Virus record (IMG/VR): IMGVR_UViG_3300042261_002385
Coordinates: 124,001 to 188,000 of that record
Strand: one strand, 5' to 3'
DNA: 64,000 nucleotides
Part shown: in pieces, positions 1-55,227 of the stretch
Position numbering within the stretch: the first letter of the stretch is position 1
How the letters are laid out: each line of letters begins with the position of its first letter
Notes under the pieces: model-generated
The model's database searches: none
What the model was told of the DNA's origin: nothing
What the model saw: the letters and a program-made list of their open reading frames with translations, nothing else
Program-made: the position numbers and the translations under genes

Positions 1-1875
1 TTTACCGATATTTAATATAAGTGATGATACCGCAATGACACCTGCTAAGATTAAAATAACAAGTCCACCTTTTAGTGCATCAACTGGTTTTAGAACTTTA
101 CCTATGATCTTAGTCGCAAAGGCGTAAGCAACAAATATAATTGCTGTTACTAATCCAAAAACTAACAACTTTAGTATCATACCAAGTGTGAGTTTGTCAA
201 ATGATGATTTAAACTTGGCGAATATAAAAGCTGACAACGCCAGTGATAGTGCCATCAAAGTAAACAACACCGGTAGTAGAATTACTTGTTTAAGAGACAA
301 TTTACCTAAGAATTTTGAGGCAAAAGCCACTATAAAAACTACTACACCCATAGCAAACCCTAAGAAAAGTATTCTTAATATTGTTCCATAACCTAATGCA
401 TCAATTGACTTTTTAAACATAGGTTTAGCAAATATAAATGCTGAAAGAGCCAAAGCTAATGACATAGTCGTCAAGAAAAGAGGTAGTAGTAAAACTTCTT
501 TTATACTTAATTTACCTAATTTATTAGTTGCCATAGCCATTAAAAACGCAACAACACTTATACTAGCTCCTAAAAATAATATTTTGAATATTGTGCCATA
601 TCCAAGTTTATCAAACGAAGATTTGAATTCTGAAAATATCGCAGCAGAAAGTGCGATAGCTAATGCAATAGCAACCATCGCAATAGGTAATAGTAATATA
701 GCAACTGGATTTGTTTTTTCTAATGAGTTTATCAGTTTCGCAATACCTAACGATACAACAGCAAACATACCGGCGATTAATATTGCGGTGATTGCTTGCA
801 TAAATCCGATAGGTTTAATCTGGTTTAAAGCGTGAGATGACCATGTGATACCTTTAGCAATCATAAACATTATCAGTGGTAGACCTAAAATAATTGCAAA
901 CATTTTACCCATTCCAATTGAAGTAGTCTTAAAACCAAAACCTCCACCACTCGCCTGTTGTGAGGTTGTTAAAGACGTAATCAAACCAGCGATACCTCTA
1001 GCGACTATAGCAAACATTACACCAATCAAAATTGCAGTCAATGCTTTCGGGATTGATATAGGTGTAATTTGTGCCAAAAATTTAGATGACATCATAATCC
1101 CTATTGACATAGAGACCATAAGAAGAGGAAGCATCACAGCTGCTTTTAGAACTGTTCCAAATGACATACTTTGCGTCTTCATCTTCATACCTCTGAACTC
1201 CACATCCTGAGATGTTGTCATCGCAGCAATTAATTTTGATATAGCCGGAGCTACTAAAGTGAAGAGTAGAGCTATTGAAGCAGCGGTCAAAATTTGAGGT
1301 ATAGTTATTGGTTTAATCTTTGATAATAACCAAGAAGAAACCATAATACCTAAAGATGCGATGACCATTATCGCCGAAGTAATTGCAGCTTCTCTTATAG
1401 TCATTGGTCCACCAGTTGCGCCCGTAATTTTAGCTACTCTTTCAAACGCAAAAGCTACTAACATAATACCAATTCCAAGTGCAATTACGGAAAGAATATT
1501 TACTTTACCTACAATTTTAAATGCTAAACCTATTGCTAATACGGCTATTGCGATTAATAAAATAGTTGCTACACCTTTTTTGAGTTGAGATTCTTTCTTA
1601 GGATCTCCACCTTCCATAGGTTCAGTTTTTTTATCATCATTTTTTTGTTTACAAAGACCAATTATGGTTTGTTGATTTTTAAGAATCTCTTGAGTATCAG
1701 TTTTTATAGATTTAATTTCAACACTTATTTGTTCCAAAGATTTACCAAAATCTCCAGATTGTAAGGCAGCACCCGTGTCTGACTTCTTTCCATCATCTTT
1801 CTTCTGTAAAGCCTCAACTAATGCTTCCAGTCCGAGTGATAAGTTATCTAATGCTGCTAATAATTGTTTATCCAT
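1..1875 (-). CDS. Tape-measure-like protein, 3'-truncated by window edge (not in ORF track)
   Basis: ATG at 1875 (MDKQLLAALDNLSLGLEALVEALQKK...), open to position 1; long Ala/Ile/Leu/Gly-rich hydrophobic helical repeats (e.g. SSFDKLGYGTIFKILFLG / KSIDALGYGTILRILFLG); late-type promoter at 1899-1909. The + strand ORFs at 188-1588 are its antisense shadows. Confidence 0.7.
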   Translation of the reverse strand, partial: MDKQLLAALDNLSLGLEALVEALQKKDDGKKSDTGAALQSGDFGKSLEQISVEIKSIKTDTQEILKNQQTIIGLCKQKNDDKKTEPMEGGDPKKESQLKKGVATILLIAIAVLAIGLAFKIVGKVNILSVIALGIGIMLVAFAFERVAKITGATGGPMTIREAAITSAIMVIASLGIMVSSWLLSKIKPITIPQILTAASIALLFTLVAPAISKLIAAMTTSQDVEFRGMKMKTQSMSFGTVLKAAVMLPLLMVSMSIGIMMSSKFLAQITPISIPKALTAILIGVMFAIVARGIAGLITSLTTSQQASGGGFGFKTTSIGMGKMFAIILGLPLIMFMIAKGITWSSHALNQIKPIGFMQAITAILIAGMFAVVSLGIAKLINSLEKTNPVAILLLPIAMVAIALAIALSAAIFSEFKSSFDKLGYGTIFKILFLGASISVVAFLMAMATNKLGKLSIKEVLLLPLFLTTMSLALALSAFIFAKPMFKKSIDALGYGTILRILFLGFAMGVVVFIVAFASKFLGKLSLKQVILLPVLFTLMALSLALSAFIFAKFKSSFDKLTLGMILKLLVFGLVTAIIFVAYAFATKIIGKVLKPVDALKGGLVILILAGVIAVSSLILNIGK

Positions 1876-2765: not shown

Positions 2766-4112
2766 ATGAGTAAATTAATTAAACTAAACACAAGTGAGGA
2801 TAAAGCCCTTTTAAACGATATCTTAAATGATGAGTTAATAGTAATTGAAGACATACAGGGTTCTAAAATCTGGATTAAATGGGATGGTCAAAATTTTGAA
2901 ATAAGACCAAAGTCAATAACGAATGAACCAATCAATTTAATCGATTTAGCAATGCAGAATTACTATAATCCTGTCACTAAATTCTTCTCAGAATTAGATG
3001 ATAGAGTTAAAAGTTTACTTAATCGTAAGTGGTGGTTTTGTTTTGAGTATTTTCCTGATGAACAACCGGCTAATATTGAATATTCTAGAGTTCCAAAGAA
3101 TCATTTAGTATTGAGTTCTATAAATAAAGGTGGTAAATTTGAATTTAATATTGAAGAACTTGATGAATACGCAAGATTATTTGATGTAGATTTGATTCCA
3201 GTTATTTATCAAGGTCAATTGACCGAGACTATGAAAGAAGCAATTATCTACTTTCTAAACACATCTGAAGAAGATTTAGAGTATGTTTTTGGTGATAAAT
3301 CATTTTCTTACTTTTTTTACAAAATATTGAATCCAATTTCTGAAAACTCATTTTTGATGGAAGAAGATTTTCAACAGAATTTAGAAAAATTAATAATTCG
3401 AAGTTCAAAAAGAGATATATCTTTCGAGTTACTGAATCCACTATACAAAAGAATGAATGACTCAAACACAACTGAGTTTGTTGAAATCTACACACTAATA
3501 CTAATTAATTTCTTAAATTTCTGTCAATCAGTGCAATTAGAAAGTGTGAAATTAAAAGGTGATACAAAAGAAGAGATGTATATTTACTTAATTTGCAAAT
3601 TATTCAATATTTATGTATCAGAAGTAAAAGAAGACCTACTTAATTTTGATTTTGTTGTTCCGGAATTTTTTGATAAAGAAAAATTTAAAATAAACACTGA
3701 GTTAATTAAAAATAAATTGACTAAAGATTATCTTAAAGAAGATGATAAACTTGAATACATCTTCAAAGTAATTTTAGGCTCATTTAACAAGAAAAGAAAA
3801 AAACCAATTGGTATCTTTACAGAAAATACCGTAAAACTATTTAATAAATTTGTTGATGATATTGAAGTCTATTTAGGTCGATATCTAAATAAAATTCAAG
3901 AAATTGAACTTGGAAGAGCTGGATTGTTAGACTTTGGTGATTTCTTTGACATTCAGTATGATACAGATGCAGAAGGTCAGGTTTATCCAGATGTTTATGA
4001 TGAGTTTGAAAAAGAAGAAGAAACTGGTAAAAAGAAAAAAGGTAAAGGTGGTAAATTTCCAGTAGGAGCTCCAACTAAAGAGGCACCATCTAAAGAAACA
4101 CCTACTAAGTAA
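2766..4112 (+). CDS. RNA ligase 2-like nucleotidyltransferase-fold protein, probably catalytically degenerate
   Basis: IEDIQGSKI (motif I position, Lys absent), FCFEYF, HLVLSSI, ARLFDVDLIPVIYQG, LEKLIIRS follow Rnl2-type motif order; acidic/basic C-tail. Confidence 0.5.
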   Translation: MSKLIKLNTSEDKALLNDILNDELIVIEDIQGSKIWIKWDGQNFEIRPKSITNEPINLIDLAMQNYYNPVTKFFSELDDRVKSLLNRKWWFCFEYFPDEQPANIEYSRVPKNHLVLSSINKGGKFEFNIEELDEYARLFDVDLIPVIYQGQLTETMKEAIIYFLNTSEEDLEYVFGDKSFSYFFYKILNPISENSFLMEEDFQQNLEKLIIRSSKRDISFELLNPLYKRMNDSNTTEFVEIYTLILINFLNFCQSVQLESVKLKGDTKEEMYIYLICKLFNIYVSEVKEDLLNFDFVVPEFFDKEKFKINTELIKNKLTKDYLKEDDKLEYIFKVILGSFNKKRKKPIGIFTENTVKLFNKFVDDIEVYLGRYLNKIQEIELGRAGLLDFGDFFDIQYDTDAEGQVYPDVYDEFEKEEETGKKKKGKGGKFPVGAPTKEAPSKETPTK

Positions 4113-4312
4113 TGAACTCAATAAATCTAAATATGACTTCACTAGAAGTTAAAGCAGAGTTAAGACCCTTAAAGTGCGAATGGACACGTGAAATGGCTAA
4201 AGATTTACAACATCATAGAGATGTGGATATGAGTTCCTTTGAACTGTTTATTGCAAAACAAATAAGAGCTAATAATCGCAAAAATTCAATCAAAAATATA
4301 TTTCTTAATTAA
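4112..4312 (+). CDS. Small protein containing a gp23-type major capsid protein segment
   Basis: VKAELRPLKCEWTREMAKDLQHHRDVD resembles gp23-family AKSRQLKAxWxxELAQDLxAxHGxD; ends NRKNSIKNIF. Confidence 0.6.
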   Translation: MNSINLNMTSLEVKAELRPLKCEWTREMAKDLQHHRDVDMSSFELFIAKQIRANNRKNSIKNIFLN

Positions 4313-4344: not shown

Positions 4345-5574
4345 ATGAGAATCTCAAACGAATTAGAGTCAGTATACCGTTCCACAATCACTCAAAAGTT
4401 AGACAAAAAAACTAAATCTCTACAATTTTTACCAAAAAGTTTAGAAGAAATCAGTAAGAAAAAACATTTCTATTTTTCGGAAAAAAAACTGAAAACAGCT
4501 TATATTATTGACATCGTTCATAATATGATACTTAAGTACTACTTCAAAAAAGAAAACAAATTTACGATTAATGCGACTGTTTTAAAACAGAAATATGGAC
4601 ACGAGTATAAAGCTTATGTTGATTTTTTGATTTATAAACAAATTATAAAAATGAAATGTAACTATAAAGCAGGTGTTACTTCTAGAATTTATGAATTAAA
4701 TCCAATAACTTTTAAACAACCAATAAGTCGAGTAAAAAATGACGATAAGGTTCTTTTAAAAAAATATAAGAAAAAAATATACGACACAATAGATTTTGTT
4801 AAAAAAGATGACTCTTCAATTCAACCAGAAATTAGAGAAAAATTAATTTCAGACCTTTTTAGTGTTGATATTGACTTTCAAAGAAGTATATTCTTTTTGA
4901 ATTGCTTGAAAAAAGAAGATATTGACATATATAATAGAAATATCTATTCGGTAGAGTCTATTAACGACAAGCACATATTTTATCACTTCGATAACTATGG
5001 TAGATTACATACAAATTTTACAATACTAAAATCATTCATTAGAAAAAACTGTTTACTAATTGATGGAGAAGAAACTTGTGAGATTGATATCAATAATTCA
5101 CAGCCTCTTTTTTTGTGCAAGTTGATACAAGAAAGTGAAACTAATTGGGTGAATAAAGATGAATTTGATTTCTTTAGAAATTTAGTAATGAATGGTAACT
5201 TTTACCAGTATTTAATTCAAATTACCGGTGAAAAAGATAGAAATAAAGTCAAAGAAATGACCTATAAAGTTCTTTTTGGTCACAATAGAATAAACTCAAA
5301 ATCTGATAAAATATTTTCACAGTTATTTCCAACAATACATCATTTTATTAAGCTTTATAAAAAAGAATGGGGTAATCATAAAATAGTAGCTCATGACCTA
5401 CAAAGAGCAGAGTCAAATTTAGTCTATAACAAAATTATTAAAAAGATAATGTTACTACATCCAGAAATAAAGATTATCACAGTTCATGACTCAATAATAT
5501 TTGCAAAAAAATATAGACAAATTGTCCAATCTATTTTTGACTATGAATTATCAAATGAATTTAATTTAAAGTAA
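4345..5574 (+). CDS. Minimal family-A/T7-type polymerase-like protein with N-terminal winged-helix-like region
   Basis: HFDNYGRLHT, EIDINNSQPLFL (motif A), RNKVKEMTYKVLFG (motif B), TVHDSII (motif C); 409 aa, no exonuclease motifs seen. Confidence 0.6.
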   Translation: MRISNELESVYRSTITQKLDKKTKSLQFLPKSLEEISKKKHFYFSEKKLKTAYIIDIVHNMILKYYFKKENKFTINATVLKQKYGHEYKAYVDFLIYKQIIKMKCNYKAGVTSRIYELNPITFKQPISRVKNDDKVLLKKYKKKIYDTIDFVKKDDSSIQPEIREKLISDLFSVDIDFQRSIFFLNCLKKEDIDIYNRNIYSVESINDKHIFYHFDNYGRLHTNFTILKSFIRKNCLLIDGEETCEIDINNSQPLFLCKLIQESETNWVNKDEFDFFRNLVMNGNFYQYLIQITGEKDRNKVKEMTYKVLFGHNRINSKSDKIFSQLFPTIHHFIKLYKKEWGNHKIVAHDLQRAESNLVYNKIIKKIMLLHPEIKIITVHDSIIFAKKYRQIVQSIFDYELSNEFNLK

Positions 5575-5597: not shown

Positions 5598-6137
5598 GTG
5601 ATAGATTTAAACAGTCCTAGATTATCTTTTATTCTAATTTCATCTAATTCTTTAGATGATATGATGTCTATATTGTGGGCAAAAAACTACCAGATTATTC
5701 CTATCAAAGGATACTATAAAGGTCAGTATGAGGACTCTGCAATGGCTTTTGCTCCTGTTGATAATGATGAGCTAAGAAAGGAATTAATATTTTTATTAAA
5801 TCACTTTAAACAAGAATGTGGATTTATTAAATACTTTGGAGAAACTGACGTAACAAAAGTTTTTGCAGATGGTTCTGAAAAACCAATGGGTATAACTCTC
5901 TACAATACAGATGAAGAAAATATATCCTATCTTTATAACGGTATGAGTTTTTCATTTGTTGAAAAAGTAAGATATTGGAAACCTACAAAATTAGAAGATT
6001 TTAAAGTAGGAATGTTAGTTGAATATCTAAACAATAATAAGTGGTATCAGAAAAAAATTGAAGATCCAAAGAGTGACTGGGATAGTATGTTCAAGCTACT
6101 GACTAAATACGATAAAGTAAGAGTAGCTTCAATTTAA
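5598..6137 (+). CDS. Hypothetical protein
   Basis: 179 aa, GTG start 4 nt after TTTAATATATA (5583-5593). Confidence 0.6.
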   Translation: MIDLNSPRLSFILISSNSLDDMMSILWAKNYQIIPIKGYYKGQYEDSAMAFAPVDNDELRKELIFLLNHFKQECGFIKYFGETDVTKVFADGSEKPMGITLYNTDEENISYLYNGMSFSFVEKVRYWKPTKLEDFKVGMLVEYLNNNKWYQKKIEDPKSDWDSMFKLLTKYDKVRVASI

Positions 6138-14101: not shown

Positions 14102-16831
14102 TCAACTAAATGGATTTATCTGACCTAATACTTGACTCCAAGTAGCAGAAGTTCTTAAAAATGTGAATCCAACTACATCAACTTTATTAGCAGAGGCAGA
14201 ATAAGTTCCACCAGCCCATTTAACACTCTGTGTGACTCCCTCAATATGAACAATTGTTGGTGAGTAAGCTGTAGCTCCTTGGCTAATAATAATAGTAGCT
14301 GTGACCGCTCTGTTATTAGTTGTTGGAACATTGACAAATTTAGCTGTGTAATTAGTTGAAGCCGTTCCGTGATACCAAATCGAACCTAAAGTGAAATCAT
14401 AAACAACATTAGATGCTGTAGCACCTGTTGGTTCTGAGCCGATAACTTCTATGACTTCAGCCAACTCAGATAAACCTGTAGATGAGAATGTGGCAGTAAG
14501 AGTCAAACTGTCACCTACTGATGTTCCACTTGTTCCAGCAGTACCAGAAGTGCCATTTGTTCCAGAAGTACCATTAATTCCAGAACTACCACTTGTGCCA
14601 GAAGTTCCTGCCTCACCACTTGTTCCAGAGGTTCCGGTCGTTCCGGATTCACCACTAGTGCCAGAAGTTCCAGTAGTGCCAGAAGTTCCAGACTCACCAG
14701 TAGTCCCAGAGGTTCCCGATTCACCGCTTGTGCCAGAAGTTCCAGTGGTTCCAGATTCTCCACTTGTTCCAGACGTTCCAGTAGTTCCTGCCTCACCACT
14801 TGTGCCAGAAGTTCCTGCCTCACCACTTGTGCCAGAAGTTCCTGCCTCACCACTTGTGCCAGAGGTTCCTGTATCACCACTTGTTCCGGACGTTCCAGAT
14901 TCCCCGCTTGTTCCAGACGTTCCAGTAGTTCCAGATGTTCCTGCCTCACCACTTGTGCCAGAGGTTCCCGTATCACCACTTGTTCCGGACGTTCCAGATT
15001 CCCCGCTTGTTCCAGACGTTCCAGTAGTTCCAGTAGTTCCAGATGTTCCTGCCTCACCACTTGTTCCAGAAGTTCCATTATCACCGGAAGTTCCGGATGT
15101 TCCTGTATCACCACTTGTTCCGGATGTTCCTGTATCACCACTTGTGCCAGAGGTTCCAAGACCACTACTTCCAGAGGTTCCATTTAAACCACTAGAACCA
15201 GAGGTTCCAGTAGAACCATCTATTCCATTGACACCACTTAGTCCGCTTGTTCCGCTTGAACCAGAGGTTCCTCGAGTACCGGAAGTTCCGGAAGTTCCAA
15301 CCGTTCCAGATACACCACTAGAACCAGAGGTTCCTCGAGTTCCAGAAGTTCCGGAAGTTCCTAAACCAGAAGTACCACTAGAACCAGCAGATCCGGATGT
15401 TCCAGACGTGCCACTAGCACCTGACGAACCAGAAGAGCCACTGCTACCCGAAGTTCCGGAGGTTCCGGAAGTTCCTTTAGTTCCGCTAGTTCCAGATGTG
15501 CCATTATCACCTGAACTACCAGATGTTCCGTTGATACCTGAGCTACCGGATGTTCCGGAAGAACCATTAAGACCAGCGGGTCCTTGAATGGCTCCCATAT
15601 CAACCCAACCATCAGCATTTGAGGCGGCTGACGTTGGATCATATATGTATAGATGACTAGTATCTTGTAAGATATATGTATCTAAAAGATTTGGTTGTGG
15701 TATAGAATAGGATGTTCCTCTACTTTGAGTTAGTGATGAGTATGATGCTTCTACACCCTGTGGACTTAAAGTCTGACCAGGTATACCCTGTGCACCAGAT
15801 GTTCCAGAAGTGGCGGAAGTTCCACTTGTTCCAGATGAACCTCCACCAGAAGTTCCAGATGAACCGCTAGTTCCAGATGAACCGCTAGTTCCAGTTTCAC
15901 CACTAGAACCTGATGACCCACTAGATCCAGATGACCCACTAGACCCAGATGAACCCGAACTGCCGGATTCACCACTTGTGCCGTTTTGACCAGAAGTTCC
16001 GCTTGAACCCGAAGAACCAGTTTCGCCAGAAGTTCCAGATTCACCAGAACTTCCACTTGAGCCAGAAGAACCGGAAGTTCCGTATTCTCCTGAAGTTCCC
16101 GATGTTCCATCAACACCTGATGAGCCAGCATCACCTTCTGCGCCACTTATACCAGAAGTTCCGGAAGTTCCGGTCACTCCGGAGCTTCCTGAGCTACCAC
16201 TTGTTCCAGTTGTTCCACTTTGACCAGAACTTCCAGAAGTGCCATTTGTGCCGTTTACACCTGATGAACCACTTGTTCCAGTTTCACCGGAACTACCACT
16301 TGTTCCAGTTGTTCCACTTTGACCAGAACTTCCAGAAGTGCCACTAGATCCTGACGATCCACTAGACCCTGAAGAACCCGAAGCACCGGACACACCTGAA
16401 GTTCCTGACGTTCCACTTGTGGTGCTAGAACTACCACCAGCAAAAGCTGTACCGTTAATTATCAAAGATGATGTATCAGAAGATAAAATAAATGGTTGAG
16501 ATTCACTACCAAGATTGATGCTATTCATCATAACAGAATTTCCATCTGTTGATATAGTGACACCACCTATATAGATTGTATTACCAGAAACATGAAGACT
16601 CTTCCATCTCAAACTAGATGTTCCCAAATCATATTGAGAGTCAACATCCGGTAAAACATGACCTGAGACGACTGTATTACTTGAAAGTATGCTAAATGTT
16701 GGAGAAGTCACTTCGGTAAACTGAAATGGAACTCCAGCTACCCAACCTCTTCCATTCCATTTGTATCTTACACCTTGAGCATTTACATAAACGTCTCCAA
16801 CATTCGGGTTATTTGGCCAATTTGTATTCAC
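14102..16831 (-). CDS. Collagen-like (Gly-Thr/Ser-Ser) fibre protein
   Basis: N-term WPNNPNVGDVY..YKWNGRGW and HVLPDVDSQYDLGTSSLRWKSLHV fibre-type domains; two long G-X-Y tracts (GTS/GSS/GES); C-terminal beta domain (YDFTLGSIWYH...VKWAGG). Confidence 0.75.
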   Translation of the reverse strand: MNTNWPNNPNVGDVYVNAQGVRYKWNGRGWVAGVPFQFTEVTSPTFSILSSNTVVSGHVLPDVDSQYDLGTSSLRWKSLHVSGNTIYIGGVTISTDGNSVMMNSINLGSESQPFILSSDTSSLIINGTAFAGGSSSTTSGTSGTSGVSGASGSSGSSGSSGSSGTSGSSGQSGTTGTSGSSGETGTSGSSGVNGTNGTSGSSGQSGTTGTSGSSGSSGVTGTSGTSGISGAEGDAGSSGVDGTSGTSGEYGTSGSSGSSGSSGESGTSGETGSSGSSGTSGQNGTSGESGSSGSSGSSGSSGSSGSSGSSGETGTSGSSGTSGSSGTSGGGSSGTSGTSATSGTSGAQGIPGQTLSPQGVEASYSSLTQSRGTSYSIPQPNLLDTYILQDTSHLYIYDPTSAASNADGWVDMGAIQGPAGLNGSSGTSGSSGINGTSGSSGDNGTSGTSGTKGTSGTSGTSGSSGSSGSSGASGTSGTSGSAGSSGTSGLGTSGTSGTRGTSGSSGVSGTVGTSGTSGTRGTSGSSGTSGLSGVNGIDGSTGTSGSSGLNGTSGSSGLGTSGTSGDTGTSGTSGDTGTSGTSGDNGTSGTSGEAGTSGTTGTTGTSGTSGESGTSGTSGDTGTSGTSGEAGTSGTTGTSGTSGESGTSGTSGDTGTSGTSGEAGTSGTSGEAGTSGTSGEAGTTGTSGTSGESGTTGTSGTSGESGTSGTTGESGTSGTTGTSGTSGESGTTGTSGTSGEAGTSGTSGSSGINGTSGTNGTSGTAGTSGTSVGDSLTLTATFSSTGLSELAEVIEVIGSEPTGATASNVVYDFTLGSIWYHGTASTNYTAKFVNVPTTNNRAVTATIIISQGATAYSPTIVHIEGVTQSVKWAGGTYSASANKVDVVGFTFLRTSATWSQVLGQINPFS
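14510..16440 (-). repeat. Gly-X-Y (GTS/GSS) coding repeat tracts, ~14510-15585 and ~15775-16440
   Basis: 9-nt periodic, GC-richer sequence (e.g. ccacttgtgccagaagtt units) standing out from the AT-rich background; boundaries approximate. Confidence 0.85.
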
Positions 16832-16847
16832 TATTCATTTCTTATTT

Positions 16848-18479
16848 TTATATTACTCCATATACTCTTAAGCTATCTACTGTCCAAGTTCCACCAGAAG
16901 AACTTGTAGTTGTTATTGTTATAGTGGCTCCAGCAGCTATAGCCTCTGAATACTTTAAATTTCTACCAACATCATGTTGGTCAGATGTTCCAGTAGCATC
17001 GAGTCTAACTATTTTACTTCTTTTATTAACACCACCAACGACTATATTGAATGTTACTGTGGCATTAGTATTAGCATTAGTAAACAGACCACACTCTGAT
17101 TCAATTATAATTTTTGAATATGCATTTGCAGCTAAAGTATAGCTAAAAGCTGTAGTGTTTGTGCTACCACTCACCGGAGTTTCGTTTGCACTTAATAACA
17201 TAACTGTGCCAGAAGCTGGACTTAAACCTGAAGTTCCGGATGTTCCGGTGGTTCCTTGAGCACCTGAGGATCCACTTGTTCCTGATGTTCCTCTTGTTCC
17301 TCTTGTTCCTGATGTGCCATTCACACCACTGCTACCGGATGTTCCTGAGGTGCCACTGGAACCTAAGAAGTTCCCATCTACCCCAGAGGTTCCACTAGTA
17401 CCTATAGTTCCAGAAGTTCCACTGGTTCCTCTAGTTCCAGAAGTTCCCATAGTTCCTCTTGTTCCAGATGTGCCGTTTACACCAGAAGAGCCAGATGTTC
17501 CTCTTGTTCCACTTGTTCCTGATGTTCCGGTGCTTCCGGAAGTTCCAGAAGTGCCATTAACACCAGAAGTTCCACTGGTTCCTCTTGTTCCTGATGATCC
17601 ACTTGTTCCAGAGGTTCCTCTAGTTCCAGAGGTTCCGTTAACTCCGCTAGTTCCTGATGTTCCATTAATACCACTAGTTCCTGAGGTCCCTGATGTTCCA
17701 TCACCACCAGCAGCTCCATCAAGATTGACAACCCAATTTGAGTACGAAGATGAACCATATTTAGCCAATACTTCATATACTAACTCACCAGTAGAAGAAT
17801 TATAGCTTTCTACCTGACCTTCTATATAATTTGATGCATCATAAGATATTATTATTAATTGAGCGGCACTATATGATAAAGAAGGATCTACAGTAATACT
17901 ATATGTTGATGAAACAGCTGTAGTTGATAAATCAATAGCTGAGTTATATTCTACTCTAAATGAATCACCATCATAACCTGATGTTCCTGAAGTTCCAGCT
18001 GGACCTGTTCCACCAATAGGTCCAATTTCACCTACTGCAGTAACCCATTGATAATAGTCACCGTCATAAATATAGGTGTATAAGTTACCATATTCAGCAT
18101 CATACCAAAAAGAACCTGTTTTAATTTGACTTGTTCCAGTGCCTGTGGGTGTAGTTGATTGATAAAAGAATTTAGCAGATACAGCTGTTATGTAATTTTT
18201 AATTTCGTTGTTTATAAAAATTGGTGAGTTTTGTTGTAAAGTGTCTATCAGTTGTTTGATTCTTGGTAGTCCGAGTTTAGCTTCGTTATTAGAAGAAAAC
18301 GGAATATTTATCAATCTTTGACTTTTAAGACTGATAACAACCATATTGTTTTTTACATAAAGATTTATTACTGTAAATGGATTGACGGTGTATGTGACTA
18401 CTCCAGTATTATCCATTATTTGAATATTCGTATCGTTTGTTCCTAAAGGTCTTAAAAATTTATCCCAACTATAACTCAT
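16848..18479 (-). CDS. Second collagen-like (GTS/GTR) virion protein
   Basis: G-X-Y tract ~17215-17710 (GTSGTRGTSG...), GSFWYDAEYGNLYTYIYDG fibre-type domain. Confidence 0.7.
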   Translation of the reverse strand: MSYSWDKFLRPLGTNDTNIQIMDNTGVVTYTVNPFTVINLYVKNNMVVISLKSQRLINIPFSSNNEAKLGLPRIKQLIDTLQQNSPIFINNEIKNYITAVSAKFFYQSTTPTGTGTSQIKTGSFWYDAEYGNLYTYIYDGDYYQWVTAVGEIGPIGGTGPAGTSGTSGYDGDSFRVEYNSAIDLSTTAVSSTYSITVDPSLSYSAAQLIIISYDASNYIEGQVESYNSSTGELVYEVLAKYGSSSYSNWVVNLDGAAGGDGTSGTSGTSGINGTSGTSGVNGTSGTRGTSGTSGSSGTRGTSGTSGVNGTSGTSGSTGTSGTSGTRGTSGSSGVNGTSGTRGTMGTSGTRGTSGTSGTIGTSGTSGVDGNFLGSSGTSGTSGSSGVNGTSGTRGTRGTSGTSGSSGAQGTTGTSGTSGLSPASGTVMLLSANETPVSGSTNTTAFSYTLAANAYSKIIIESECGLFTNANTNATVTFNIVVGGVNKRSKIVRLDATGTSDQHDVGRNLKYSEAIAAGATITITTTSSSGGTWTVDSLRVYGVI

Positions 18480-37396: not shown

Positions 37397-38035
37397 TTAG
37401 TATTTATAGTTCTTAGTAGATTTACGACACTTAATTTGACTTTTCACATTATTCATTTCTGAACTACCAAACTCAAGTCTAGCATTTTTTCTTTTCATTA
37501 CTAAGCCTTCAATCATATCAATTGGTGTTAGTTGATTGAAAAGATCGTAGAATCCATTAAGATAAGATTTGACTCGTAATACATTTTCAGAAACTGTGAA
37601 TAAGTAATCTTTTTCTGAATTAATTTGACCATAAAGCTGGTCTAAAAGACTGACTCTTTCTTCAAATGTTTTACCAACTAAATATTCGCCATCAAAGCAT
37701 AGAATATCAAAAATTACAAACTTATGATTGAATGGTTGACTAGTTTCATCCAATTTTGATTTATTGAGATATTCGCCATTAAGTATCATCCATCCACCAT
37801 TTCCTCTATAAAGAGACTTGACTTCTTCATCGGTCAGTCTAAAATTAGTTAGTCTTTGATTGTGACGGTTCATCACGATAAATTTAAGACCATTTGTAAA
37901 AATCAAACAGTTAGAACCATTGAGTTTTGGCTGTGCTAAAAGACTATCATTGTCCCAGAAGTTTAAATCATCCGGCGATATAGCATTTTTAGGTCGAGGA
38001 GGATAAATATAACGATAGTTTATATATTTTGGCAT
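37397..38035 (-). CDS. ATP-dependent ligase, adenylation domain only (RNA or DNA ligase)
   Basis: QPKLNGSN (motif I, Lys intact), LNGEY (III), FVIFDIL (IIIa), IEGLVMK (IV), KCRK (V); 212 aa. Confidence 0.8.
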   Translation of the reverse strand: MPKYINYRYIYPPRPKNAISPDDLNFWDNDSLLAQPKLNGSNCLIFTNGLKFIVMNRHNQRLTNFRLTDEEVKSLYRGNGGWMILNGEYLNKSKLDETSQPFNHKFVIFDILCFDGEYLVGKTFEERVSLLDQLYGQINSEKDYLFTVSENVLRVKSYLNGFYDLFNQLTPIDMIEGLVMKRKNARLEFGSSEMNNVKSQIKCRKSTKNYKY

Positions 38036-38071: not shown

Positions 38072-38091
38072 TTTGTAAAATAAATTTTTAG

Positions 38092-38162
38092 AGGTTGGGG
38101 ATAGAATTTCACTACCGTAATGGACTTTGCGAGTCCACGCCTAAATACTCAGCCACCCAACC
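38092..38162 (-). tRNA. trnC: tRNA-Cys(GCA), non-canonical
   Basis: GGTTGGG/CCCAACC acceptor stem, D arm GCTGAGTATTTAGGC, anticodon arm TGGAC-TCGCAAA-GTCCA, T arm GGTAG-TGAAATT-CTATC, discriminator U73; CCA not encoded. Confidence 0.8.
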
Positions 38163-55031: not shown

Positions 55032-55227
55032 TTTTGTAGATTTTATTTATAGAACTTTTTCTTCTTAAAGGTCTTTCGAAAATACCTAACTTTCTGAGTA
55101 TTTCTAAGTCTATTTCTTTTGCTACTTGCTCAGATAAAATTTTAGTAAGTTCAGATTCTATGTCTCTTGTAGAAGTAGAAACAGTATTATTACTATCAAC
55201 CACACCTTTGACTTTATACTTTTTCAC
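55021..55227 (-). CDS. Small protein containing the spine-helix segment of a gp23-type major capsid protein
   Basis: DIESELTKILSEQVAKEIDLEILRKL resembles gp23-family DAEAELxxILSxxIxxEIxREIL; ends RRKSSINKIY. Confidence 0.65.
   Translation of the reverse strand: MKKYKVKGVVDSNNTVSTSTRDIESELTKILSEQVAKEIDLEILRKLGIFERPLRRKSSINKIYKNVC

What the first reader, a model, noticed from the sequence alone, without database searches (positions are those of the whole stretch)
4345..5574. Minimal 409-aa polymerase with mixed PolA / T7 RNA polymerase signatures
Seen: D-x-x-G-R (FDNYGRLH, like T7 RNAP DWRGRVY), motif A DINNSQP, motif B RxxxKxxxYxxLFG, motif C VHDS (HDS as in T7-type RNAPs; PolA usually HDE), plus an N-terminal winged-helix-like region and no exonuclease. 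It is less than half the size of T7 RNAP or Pol I. T4-like phages normally replicate with family B polymerases. Inference: a specialised primase, origin-priming, repair or mini-transcription enzyme.
Basis: partly seen in the sequence, partly recalled or inferred. Interest (0 to 1): 0.6.

Follow-up and report, generated by a model that had tools for sequence, protein, structure and literature searches.

The report
Winged-helix mini family-A polymerase
A 409-residue protein of a 436-kb T4-like huge phage combines a winged-helix DNA-binding domain with a stripped-down (~260-residue) Pol I/T7-type polymerase core that keeps every catalytic residue. It belongs to a large, unnamed family shared with bacterial mobile elements and most likely acts as an accessory primase-polymerase, not the replicase.

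Summary

R220, D248, K303, H381 and D382 are invariant across 59 divergent members. They align with Klenow R668, D705, K758, H881 and D882. The DxxGR and HDS motifs are RNAP-like. No exonuclease and no steric-gate Glu are present.

No Pfam, NCBIfam, PHROGs or PADLOC model hits the protein. The phage has its own PolB, DnaB helicase and Toprim primase, so this enzyme is accessory.

In 80 huge-phage loci it lies between an RNA-ligase-fold gene (71/80) and a 179-aa gene (79/80). Bacterial relatives (Bacteroidota, Planctomycetes, Ignavibacteria) follow an integrase and an excisionase-like gene on integrative elements.

The best reading is a TV-Pol/CcPol-like primase-polymerase targeted by its winged helix. 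I rate it a new variant of a known kind. Substrate (NTP or dNTP) and biological role remain untested.

The parts
4345..5574 (+). The 409-aa polymerase gene (P0001): winged helix plus minimal family-A-type polymerase
   Evidence: ORF. Model pLDDT 88.5, pTM 0.84. Fold matches. Single copy in the 436-kb genome.
4432..4734 (+). N-terminal winged-helix domain (about residues 30-130)
4792..5568 (+). Minimal thumb-palm-fingers polymerase core (about residues 150-408)
4990..5010 (+). D216-x-x-G219-R220-L-H222 beta-hairpin (the T/DxxGR motif)
   Evidence: R220 and H222 are invariant; D216 and G219 are at 90% or more in 59 sequences. G219-R220 aligns with Klenow G667-R668 in hhalign. T7 RNAP has D421-W-R-G-R425.
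5086..5115 (+). Motif A: D248-I-N-N-S-Q-P-L-F-L, at the end of palm strand 242-247
   Evidence: D248 is invariant; N251, S252, Q253 and P254 are at 90% or more. D248 aligns with Pol I D705. No Glu sits at the steric-gate position in either possible register.
5239..5280 (+). Motif B (O-helix): R299-xxx-K303-xxx-Y307-xxx-F311-G312
   Evidence: K303 is invariant, and the -4 position is R or K throughout. It aligns with Pol I R754, K758, F762, Y766, G767 and with T7 RNAP R627, K631, Y639, G640.
5479..5493 (+). Motif C: T379-V-H381-D382-S383, at the turn of hairpin 378-387
   Evidence: H381 and D382 are invariant and T379 is at 90% or more. It aligns with Pol I H881, D882, E883. HDS matches T7 RNAP H811-D812-S813.
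2766..4112 (+). Conserved upstream neighbour c3: 448-aa RNA-ligase-fold protein
   Evidence: Present upstream in 71 of 80 loci at 62-90% identity. The top 40 Foldseek PDB hits are all ATP-dependent RNA ligases (T4 Rnl2 1.2e-6, Rnl1, Trl1); the model is only pLDDT 63.5. The protein-atlas feature search points to RNA_ligase / T4_Rnl2_C clusters at 0.93-0.95.
4112..4312 (+). Small ORF c5 (66 aa); its start overlaps the stop of c3
   Evidence: Found in 48 of 80 loci. Only a sub-threshold Gp23 match. Function unknown.
5598..6137 (+). Conserved downstream neighbour c1: 179-aa protein, 23 nt after the polymerase stop
   Evidence: Found in 79 of 80 loci. Alignment A3. No family or PDB sequence match. 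Weak atlas lead only.

Best explanation
P0001 is an active nucleic-acid polymerase of the family A / T7 superfamily that lacks an exonuclease. It is reduced to about 260 catalytic residues: a short thumb, an Arg-bearing hairpin, an RRM palm with two metal-binding aspartates, and an O-helix. It is fused to an N-terminal winged helix that places it on DNA.

It is not the phage's replicase. I take it to be a specialised primase-polymerase, meaning an initiator that starts or extends short strands at particular DNA sites. This is what was proposed for TV-Pols and shown for CcPol-MP.

In bacteria, the family serves integrative mobile elements and a temperate-phage early region. In the huge-phage clade it has been joined to an RNA-ligase-fold protein and a 179-aa protein, which suggests that what it synthesises is then sealed or processed by these neighbours.

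What is shown: the fold, the conserved active site, the domain architecture, the synteny and the distribution. What is inferred: de novo priming, the nucleotide substrate, the DNA target of the winged helix, and cooperation with the neighbours.

My confidence is about 0.9 that it is an active A-type polymerase and about 0.4 for the primase/initiator role. The figure given is a blend.
For: Fold:
- Every top Foldseek hit is a PolA.

Active site:
- R220, D248, K303, H381 and D382 are invariant down to 20% identity.
- They are collinear with Klenow R668, D705, K758, H881 and D882.
- Profile-profile P = 6.7e-4 against a PolA alignment.

Not the replicase: the genome has PolB, DnaB_C and a Toprim primase, and no PF00476 hit.

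Mobile-element context:
- Of 80 bacterial loci, 43 carry a nearby tyrosine integrase and 21 an HTH_17 excisionase-like gene directly upstream, with restriction-modification cargo downstream.
- P0261 lies in a region with Dam, Rad52, ParB and a serine recombinase.
- A Hymenobacter plasmid copy lies two genes from one annotated as a nucleotide-binding protein; that it is ParA-like is my guess.
- The distribution is patchy: 18 of 301 genomes sampled in the phylum.

Precedent:
- TV-Pols were predicted to be primase-polymerases of transposons and viruses (PMC2579912).
- CcPol-MP is an A-family polymerase that primes (PMC7581432, PMC10061031).

The helix equivalent to Pol I 684-692 is short (model helix 230-236). 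PMC7581432 links this feature to room for an initiating nucleotide.
Against: - No helicase is adjacent, unlike TV-Pol with D5 or CcPol with Cch2.
- The phage already has a Toprim primase, so a second primase needs a special reason.
- The strongest phage-specific linkage is to an RNA-ligase-fold gene. That points as much to repair or RNA work as to replication initiation.
- Complex prediction with the 179-aa neighbour gave no verdict.
- No sequence-level link to a named TV-Pol was obtained.
- Nothing here shows de novo initiation, and family A enzymes are normally primer-dependent.
Confidence: 0.5

Rival explanations
1. Synthesis-and-sealing repair module, a functional analogue of bacterial LigD. 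The mini-polymerase fills gaps or adds a few (ribo)nucleotides at nicks or breaks in phage DNA (or in RNA:DNA or RNA duplexes). The adjacent RNA-ligase-fold protein then seals the 3'-ribo nick. The 179-aa protein would be an end-binding or accessory factor.
For: - The RNA-ligase-fold gene is immediately upstream in 71 of 80 loci, and the 179-aa gene downstream in 79 of 80.
- The genes abut or overlap with no terminator-like site between them.
- The polymerase lacks the steric-gate Glu and carries RNAP-like DxxGR and HDS motifs, so ribonucleotide use is conceivable.
- Jumbo phages are known to pair RNA ligases with nucleotidyltransferases that restore missing nucleotides (PMC7824862).
Against: - The ligase-like neighbour is absent from the bacterial relatives, so this cannot be the family's ancestral role.
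- The neighbour's motif I appears to have Asp where the adenylated Lys should be. This was not checked by superposition, so it may not be a working ligase.
- Its model is only of moderate quality (pLDDT 63.5).
- A winged helix suggests site- or structure-specific targeting rather than general repair.
Confidence: 0.25
2. A miniature DNA-dependent RNA polymerase. The winged helix would recognise a promoter-like site and the core would transcribe a small set of phage genes or make a regulatory or priming RNA.
For: - D-x-x-G-R (D, as in RNAPs, where DNA polymerases have T) and H-D-S are the T7 RNAP versions of these motifs.
- There is no Glu steric gate.
Against: - The profile comparison favours PolA (P 6.7e-4) over T7 RNAP (0.56).
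- The residue equivalent to T7 RNAP Y639, which selects rNTPs, is Phe311.
- The protein has no specificity loop, intercalating hairpin or N-terminal promoter domain of known single-subunit RNAPs; it is too small.
- The mobile-element context in bacteria is a replication/maintenance position, not a transcription one.
Confidence: 0.1
3. A template-independent or loosely templated terminal transferase acting on RNA or DNA 3' ends, for example restoring damaged tRNA or RNA ends before ligation.
For: - It is linked to an RNA-ligase-fold gene.
- Pol theta and CcPol-MP, both structural relatives, have terminal-transferase activity (PMC7581432).
- Jumbo phages carry RNA-end repair nucleotidyltransferases next to ligases (PMC7824862).
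Against: - The template-contacting residues (R220 hairpin, Q353 equivalent to Klenow Q849) are conserved.
- The bacterial relatives have no RNA-repair context.
- The known RNA-end repair enzymes belong to the Pol-beta fold.
Confidence: 0.08
4. A catalytically dead polymerase fold kept as a DNA-binding or scaffolding protein.
For: No curated polymerase family model recognises it. Rice (PMC10061031) notes that some mobile-element 'Pol' partners keep little more than a vestigial RRM.
Against: The metal-binding Asp pair, the O-helix Lys, the hairpin Arg and the motif C His are invariant across 59 sequences at 20-61% identity. That is the pattern of a working active site.
Confidence: 0.03

Closest known systems
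TV-Pol family (Iyer, Abhiman & Aravind 2008, PMC2579912)
   Same: - Minimal superfamily-A core without nuclease: thumb, beta-hairpin with an absolutely conserved Arg, RRM palm with two Asp, and fingers with RxxxK.
- 400-600 residue proteins.
- Carried by viruses and by integrase- or resolvase-bearing mobile elements of Bacteroidetes, Planctomycetes and others.
- Related to both Pol I and T7-like RNAPs.
- Never fused to exonucleases.
   Different: - No sequence link to a named TV-Pol could be made: the family profile finds nothing in Microcystis phage Ma-LMM01.
- No D5-like helicase is fused or adjacent.
- The N-terminal domain here is a winged helix, whereas TV-PolN was described as all-helical.
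- The RNA-ligase-fold and 179-aa partners, and the huge-phage habitat, are not described for TV-Pols.
CcPol-MP primase of SCCmec and PolA-SSB pairs (PMC7581432, PMC10061031)
   Same: - A truncated A-family polymerase on a mobile element that has lost proofreading.
- A short last thumb helix.
- A small gene directly downstream.
- Shown experimentally that such an enzyme can prime.
   Different: - CcPol is recognisably Pol I-like in sequence, keeps three exonuclease helices and keeps the two ribonucleotide-discriminating residues.
- It needs an OB-fold partner and sits next to a helicase.
- P0001 is not detected by PF00476.
- It has a winged helix instead of an exonuclease remnant and has no steric-gate Glu.
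- No partner interaction was supported (no verdict).
Family A DNA polymerases (Klenow, T7 gp5, Pol theta, apicoplast Pol)
   Different: - The core is roughly 260 residues against about 400.
- No 3'-5' exonuclease domain.
- HDS instead of HDE.
- DxxGR instead of TxxGR.
- A two-residue insertion between the motif A Asp and the SQ pair.
- No PNLQNIP segment.
- Not part of the 19-cluster PolA classification, which rests on detectable sequence similarity (PMC10201439).
Single-subunit RNA polymerases (T7, mitochondrial, N4 mini-vRNAP, N4 RNAP II)
   Different: - Much smaller.
- No promoter-recognition elements.
- Phe in place of the rNTP-selecting Tyr639.
- Weaker fold and profile similarity than to DNA polymerases.
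LigD (polymerase + ligase) of bacterial NHEJ: analogy only
   Same: A polymerase genetically coupled to an ATP-dependent ligase-fold protein.
   Different: The LigD polymerase is an archaeo-eukaryotic primase fold and the two activities are usually fused. Here the polymerase is A-type and sits on a separate gene from the ligase-like protein, whose motif I looks non-canonical.

Membership tests
Family A DNA polymerase (PolA, Pfam PF00476) | Right-hand thumb/palm/fingers fold of the Pol I class | tested here: met
Family A DNA polymerase (PolA, Pfam PF00476) | Catalytic Asp of motif A and Asp of motif C; O-helix R/KxxxK...(F/Y)xxx(Y/F)G | tested here: met
   D248, D382 and K303 are invariant in 59 sequences. 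They are collinear with D705, D882, R754 and K758.
Family A DNA polymerase (PolA, Pfam PF00476) | Sequence membership: reaches the curated family model | tested here: not met
   No PF00476 hit at E <= 10 for P0001. A bacterial homolog shows no hit at E <= 0.001 and ten divergent members none at E <= 0.1. Family profiles find no PolA among PDB sequences. The only signal is a weak profile-profile one, P 6.7e-4.
Family A DNA polymerase (PolA, Pfam PF00476) | Motif C H-D-E and a steric-gate Glu five residues after the motif A Asp (dNTP selection) | tested here: not met
   Motif C is H-D-S. The gate position is Q253 or L255 depending on register, and is never a conserved Glu.
Single-subunit RNA polymerase (T7-like) | D-x-x-G-R and H-D-S motif variants | tested here: met
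   D216xxG219R220 and H381-D382-S383, against T7 RNAP D421WRGR425 and H811-D812-S813.
Single-subunit RNA polymerase (T7-like) | rNTP-selecting Tyr (T7 Y639); closest fold and profile similarity to RNAPs; promoter-recognition modules | tested here: not met
TV-Pol (Iyer 2008) | Minimal core: thumb, Arg hairpin, two-Asp palm, RxxxK fingers, no nuclease | tested here: met
   Model secondary structure and conserved residues.
TV-Pol (Iyer 2008) | Residence in viruses and in integrase/resolvase-bearing mobile elements | tested here: met
   Huge-phage loci. Bacterial loci with a Phage_integrase gene, an HTH_17 gene and then the homolog. Serine-recombinase context.
TV-Pol (Iyer 2008) | Detectable sequence relationship to named TV-Pol proteins | tested here: inconclusive
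   The A5 profile finds nothing in Ma-LMM01, a stated TV-Pol carrier. The paper's alignment and accession list are not held. BFVD rows of 700-1,275 aa with 270-290 aligned columns may be TV-Pol-helicase fusions, but they are unnamed.
TV-Pol (Iyer 2008) | Fusion or linkage to a D5-like helicase, or an all-helical TV-PolN domain | tested here: not met
   No recurrent helicase gene cluster lies next to the gene in the 80 phage loci or the 80 bacterial loci; only a handful of neighbour genes were scanned against Pfam. The N-terminal domain is a winged helix.
CcPol-MP / PolA-SSB primases | Small OB-fold partner that binds the polymerase, with an adjacent helicase | tested here: inconclusive
   A conserved 179-aa downstream gene exists. 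Its fold is unknown and the complex prediction gave no verdict. No helicase is adjacent.
Primase (functional class) | De novo dinucleotide synthesis on a template | not testable with these tools
   Needs biochemistry.

The most novel reading that the evidence does not exclude
The family may be the smallest self-sufficient member of the Pol I / T7 superfamily. A core of about 260 residues would start chains by itself at sites chosen by its winged helix, using ribonucleotides or both sugar types. In huge phages it would form, with a non-canonical RNA-ligase-fold protein (Asp at the adenylated-Lys position) and a 179-aa partner, a previously undescribed PolA-based synthesis-and-joining pathway for origin firing or genome repair.
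Probability: 0.2. Interest if true: 0.75.

Novelty: new variant of a known kind. Interest (0 to 1): 0.55.

Why it matters
- **Minimal functional unit.** The protein shows how far the Pol I / T7 polymerase fold can be pared down while keeping its active site (about 260 residues against about 400). This bears on the minimal functional unit of the superfamily, and on how DNA- and RNA-polymerising branches diverged: it carries RNAP-type DxxGR and HDS motifs on a DNAP-like scaffold.
- **Annotation gap.** The family is large (thousands of clusters), is core-like in a clade of huge phages, and recurs on Bacteroidota integrative elements. Yet no curated family model names it, so it is annotated 'hypothetical' almost everywhere.
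- **If it primes.** It would be a second experimental case, after CcPol-MP, of an A-family primase, and one that needs no OB-fold helper.
- **Possible use.** A compact, proofreading-free polymerase with possibly relaxed sugar selectivity could also be useful as an enzyme.

Tried and rejected
**Family and sequence searches**
- Family scans of P0001 (Pfam, NCBIfam, PHROGs, PADLOC) found nothing usable.
- Sequence searches of the PDB, with the protein and with family profiles, gave only noise.
- hhalign against single Pol I, T7 DNAP and T7 RNAP sequences was not significant, although it was collinear.
- My first local hhalign run used global mode by mistake and is void. The local-mode rerun is.

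**Ideas rejected**
- I considered that the ORF might be a homing endonuclease or intron ORF inside a split capsid gene, prompted by the weak Gp23 hit of the 66-aa ORF. I dropped this because the flanks are an RNA-ligase-fold gene and an unrelated 179-aa gene, and the real Gp23 gene lies about 140 kb away.
- A reverse transcriptase or family B polymerase is not supported by either fold search.

**No result**
- Complex prediction of the polymerase with the 179-aa neighbour gave no verdict (score 0.00). This is not evidence either way.
- The promoter scan gave 29 sites against 29 expected by chance, and no terminators.

A three-sequence alignment worked.
I left that row out and did not send it elsewhere.

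**TV-Pol and other links**
- The TV-Pol supplementary alignment is not held.
- Ma-LMM01 gave no hit with the family profile. PF00476 found only what appears to be its ordinary PolA.
- HMMs of c3 and c1 found no counterparts in the bacterial loci.

Full report
**1. The observation**

The ORF at 4345-5574 (+) is open and encodes 409 residues. I checked the comparison strings on sequences fetched by tools rather than from memory:
- T7 RNAP has M-D421-W-R-G-R425-V-Y, D537-G-S-C-S-G, R627-xxx-K631...Y639-G and I-H811-D812-S813-F.
- E. coli Pol I has T-G-R668-L-S-S, D705-Y-S-Q-I-E710, R754-xxx-K758-xxx-F762-xxx-Y766-G and V-H881-D882-E883.

The ORF is not a chance frame:
- The word-based search found 1,289 relatives, the best 120 at 60-100% identity, all unnamed or 'hypothetical'.
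- An exhaustive profile search found 5,533 representative clusters at E <= 1e-3, of which 285 were below 1e-30.

**2. What the protein is**

Curated libraries do not recognise it. Pfam, NCBIfam, PHROGs and PADLOC give nothing. Sequence searches of the PDB give only noise.

AlphaFold2 with a 29-sequence alignment gives a confident model: pLDDT 88.5, pTM 0.84.
- Every top Foldseek hit against the PDB is a family A DNA polymerase. These include apicoplast Pol at 7e-4, KlenTaq, T7 gp5, Pol theta and Klenow.

|---|---|
| Klenow | 12.0 |
| apPOL | 11.7 |
| Aquifex Pol I | 11.6 |
| T7 DNAP | 11.5 |
| Pol theta | 11.4 |
| Pol nu | 11.2 |
| yeast mtRNAP | 9.6 |
| T7 RNAP | 8.1 |

The architecture is therefore winged helix (30-130), then a short helical thumb (135-207), then a beta-hairpin (213-223). 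Palm strand 242-247 ends in D248. A helical fingers insert spans 252-342, including the O-helix at 299-311. Then come a long helix (347-371), a hairpin (378-387) with H381-D382 at its turn, and a final helix. This is the RRM-palm topology with the fingers inserted after strand 1.

**3. The active site**

In 59 sequences that fall to 20% identity with P0001, the invariant residues are R220, H222, D248, Y287, K303, E356, H381 and D382. D216, G219, N224, T226, R233, N251, S252, Q253, P254, Q353 and T379 are at 90% or more.

Profile alignment to Pol I is statistically weak but collinear across every motif:

| P0001 | Pol I |
|---|---|
| G219-R220 | G667-R668 |
| D248 | D705 |
| R299 / K303 | R754 / K758 |
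| Y307 | F762 |
| F311-G312 | Y766-G767 |
| Q353 | Q849 |
| H381-D382-S383 | H881-D882-E883 |

- Against a small PolA profile the pairwise P-value is 6.7e-4 over 171 columns.
- Against T7-like DNAPs it is 5e-3.
- Against T7-like RNAPs it is 0.56, with motif B alone aligned.

Fold and profile both place the protein nearer the DNA polymerases. Two diagnostic motifs (DxxGR and HDS) are nevertheless the RNAP variants.

There is a two-residue insertion between D248 and the S-Q pair. In neither register is there a Glu at the Pol I steric-gate position. The residue equivalent to T7 RNAP Y639 is Phe. Sugar selectivity therefore cannot be read from the sequence.

**4. Genomic setting in the phage**

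The window is positions 124,001-188,000 of a 436-kb virus record. That record has:
- a Gp23-type capsid gene
- family B polymerase pieces
- a DnaB-type helicase
- a Toprim primase
- no PF00476 hit
- a single copy of this gene

The enzyme is therefore accessory.

Among 50,697 deposited phage records, only six uncultured genomes of 595-735 kb carry it.

In 80 IMG/VR loci the gene sits in a fixed block: a 448-aa gene (71/80), a 66-aa ORF (48/80), the polymerase (80/80) and a 179-aa gene (79/80). All are on one strand and abut or overlap.

The 448-aa protein has an RNA-ligase fold. Its top 40 Foldseek PDB hits are all ATP-dependent RNA ligases, led by T4 Rnl2 at 1.2e-6. The model is only moderate, at pLDDT 63.5. 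An independent feature-based search also points to RNA_ligase / T4_Rnl2_C clusters.

The 179-aa protein has no recognisable family.

**5. The wider family**

Divergent members of 25-30% identity keep both domains and all the motifs.
- A scan of one genome per prokaryotic species returned 80 loci. They are mainly Bacteroidota, Ignavibacteria and Planctomycetes, and include cultured isolates.
- The family profile matches these over its full length at 1e-52 to 1e-74.
- 18 of 301 sampled genomes of that phylum carry the family, a patchy, mobile-element-like distribution.
- The recurrent context is a tyrosine integrase, a variable gene, an HTH_17 excisionase-like gene, then the homolog, then cargo such as type I restriction-modification.
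- One member lies in a temperate-phage-like early region with Dam, Rad52, ParB and a serine recombinase.
- A Hymenobacter plasmid copy lies two genes from one annotated as a nucleotide-binding protein; that it is ParA-like is my guess. That plasmid also has an ordinary Rep.
- The ligase-like and 179-aa genes are absent from the bacterial loci. The trio is therefore a huge-phage innovation.

**6. Mechanism**

- Shown: an A-type polymerase fold, an intact active site, a winged helix, the absence of an exonuclease, accessory status in the phage, and residence on mobile elements.
- Inferred: the winged helix delivers the catalytic core to particular DNA sites, where it starts or extends short strands.

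In mobile elements this position and logic match what Iyer et al. proposed for TV-Pols, which they saw as primase-polymerases of transposons and viruses (PMC2579912). They also match what Bebel et al. demonstrated for CcPol-MP (PMC7581432). Those authors note that a short last thumb helix could leave room for an initiating nucleotide. The equivalent helix here is short (230-236).

The main rival for the phage clade is a synthesis-and-sealing repair module with the RNA-ligase-fold neighbour, analogous in logic to LigD. A mini RNA polymerase, a terminal transferase and a dead scaffold are less likely, for the reasons given under the rival explanations.

**7. Comparison with the known, and novelty**

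The kind is known: minimal A-superfamily polymerases of mobile elements and viruses. Some database entries already carry such a name:
- a 42%-identical UniProt protein is called 'Putative DNA polymerase I [uncultured marine phage]' (TM 0.90)
- an ESM-Atlas cluster of Bacteroidota homologs is auto-named 'family A palm domain-containing' (TM 0.80)

I did not find any of the following described:
- the winged-helix fusion
- the degree of reduction
- the RNAP-type motif variants on a DNAP-like scaffold
- the linkage to an RNA-ligase-fold gene
- the status as a conserved gene of a huge-phage clade

The sources checked were the TV-Pol paper, the CcPol papers, the jumbo-phage survey (PMC7824862) and the 19-cluster PolA reclassification (PMC10201439).

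Membership of TV-Pol proper remains unproven. I therefore rate it a new variant of a known kind, with interest of about 0.55.

Noticed in passing
window 2766-4112 (+): The RNA-ligase-fold neighbour reads E28-D29-I-Q31-G-S33-K34 (all invariant) where, recalled from memory rather than fetched, T4 Rnl2 motif I reads E-K35-I-H-G-T-N. The adenylated lysine therefore seems to be replaced by Asp. The K38-W-D-G of this copy is N-W-N-G in the family consensus. It may be a non-canonical or inactive ligase.
   Followed up: partly
window 4112-4312 (+); also window ~55087-55164 (-): The conserved 66-aa ORF between the ligase-like gene and the polymerase has a sub-threshold match to positions ~130-183 of the Gp23 capsid family. 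A second scrap of Gp23 similarity lies about 51 kb away. The meaning is unknown.
   Followed up: partly
own genome G000:C1:267424-268926 (-), outside the window: The real Gp23-type major capsid gene match is read through one TAG and one TAA. The gene may be interrupted (intron, frameshift) or split.
   Followed up: no
own genome G000:C1:317539-318897 (+) and 203506-203952 (-), outside the window: The family B DNA polymerase matches fall at two distant places: two matches in one 487-aa frame at 317.5-318.9 kb, and one at 203.5 kb with a TAA inside. This may be a split or duplicated PolB.
   Followed up: no
window 14102-16831 (-) and 16848-18479 (-): The GC-rich island (0.42-0.46 against about 0.30 elsewhere) consists of two large collagen-triple-helix repeat proteins (Pfam Collagen, 3.6e-76 and 1.1e-23). 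They are probably fibre proteins.
   Followed up: yes
window 37466-37936 (-) and 38091-38162 (-): A second RNA ligase domain, this one recognisable by Pfam (PF09414, 8.4e-7, at the cut-off), lies beside the only tRNA gene in the window (tRNA-Cys GCA).
   Followed up: no
window 1-1875 (-): A membrane-spanning protein of more than 625 aa with internally repeated hydrophobic blocks runs off the window start. Homologs of about 1,100 aa lie upstream of the block in 14 other loci (cluster c15).
   Followed up: no
L252/L253 (Hymenobacter qilianensis plasmid NZ_CP060788.1, 2824-4398): A 524-aa family member annotated 'hypothetical protein' lies two genes from one annotated as a nucleotide-binding protein (ParA-like is my guess). 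It follows a 2.1-kb stretch in which PLSDB's partial gene table lists no gene. The plasmid also has an ordinary Rep/ParA module, so this may be a second replicon.
   Followed up: partly
BFVD rows (F2Y0M9, A0A7M3UP97, A0A2I6J2T6, A0A2H4YBD9, A0A499SAH4): Several 700-1,275-aa viral proteins align to about 270-290 columns of the model at low rmsd (4.8-6.3 A). One is named as having a replication origin-binding protein domain (Pyramimonas orientalis virus). They may be polymerase-helicase fusions of the TV-Pol type.
   Followed up: no
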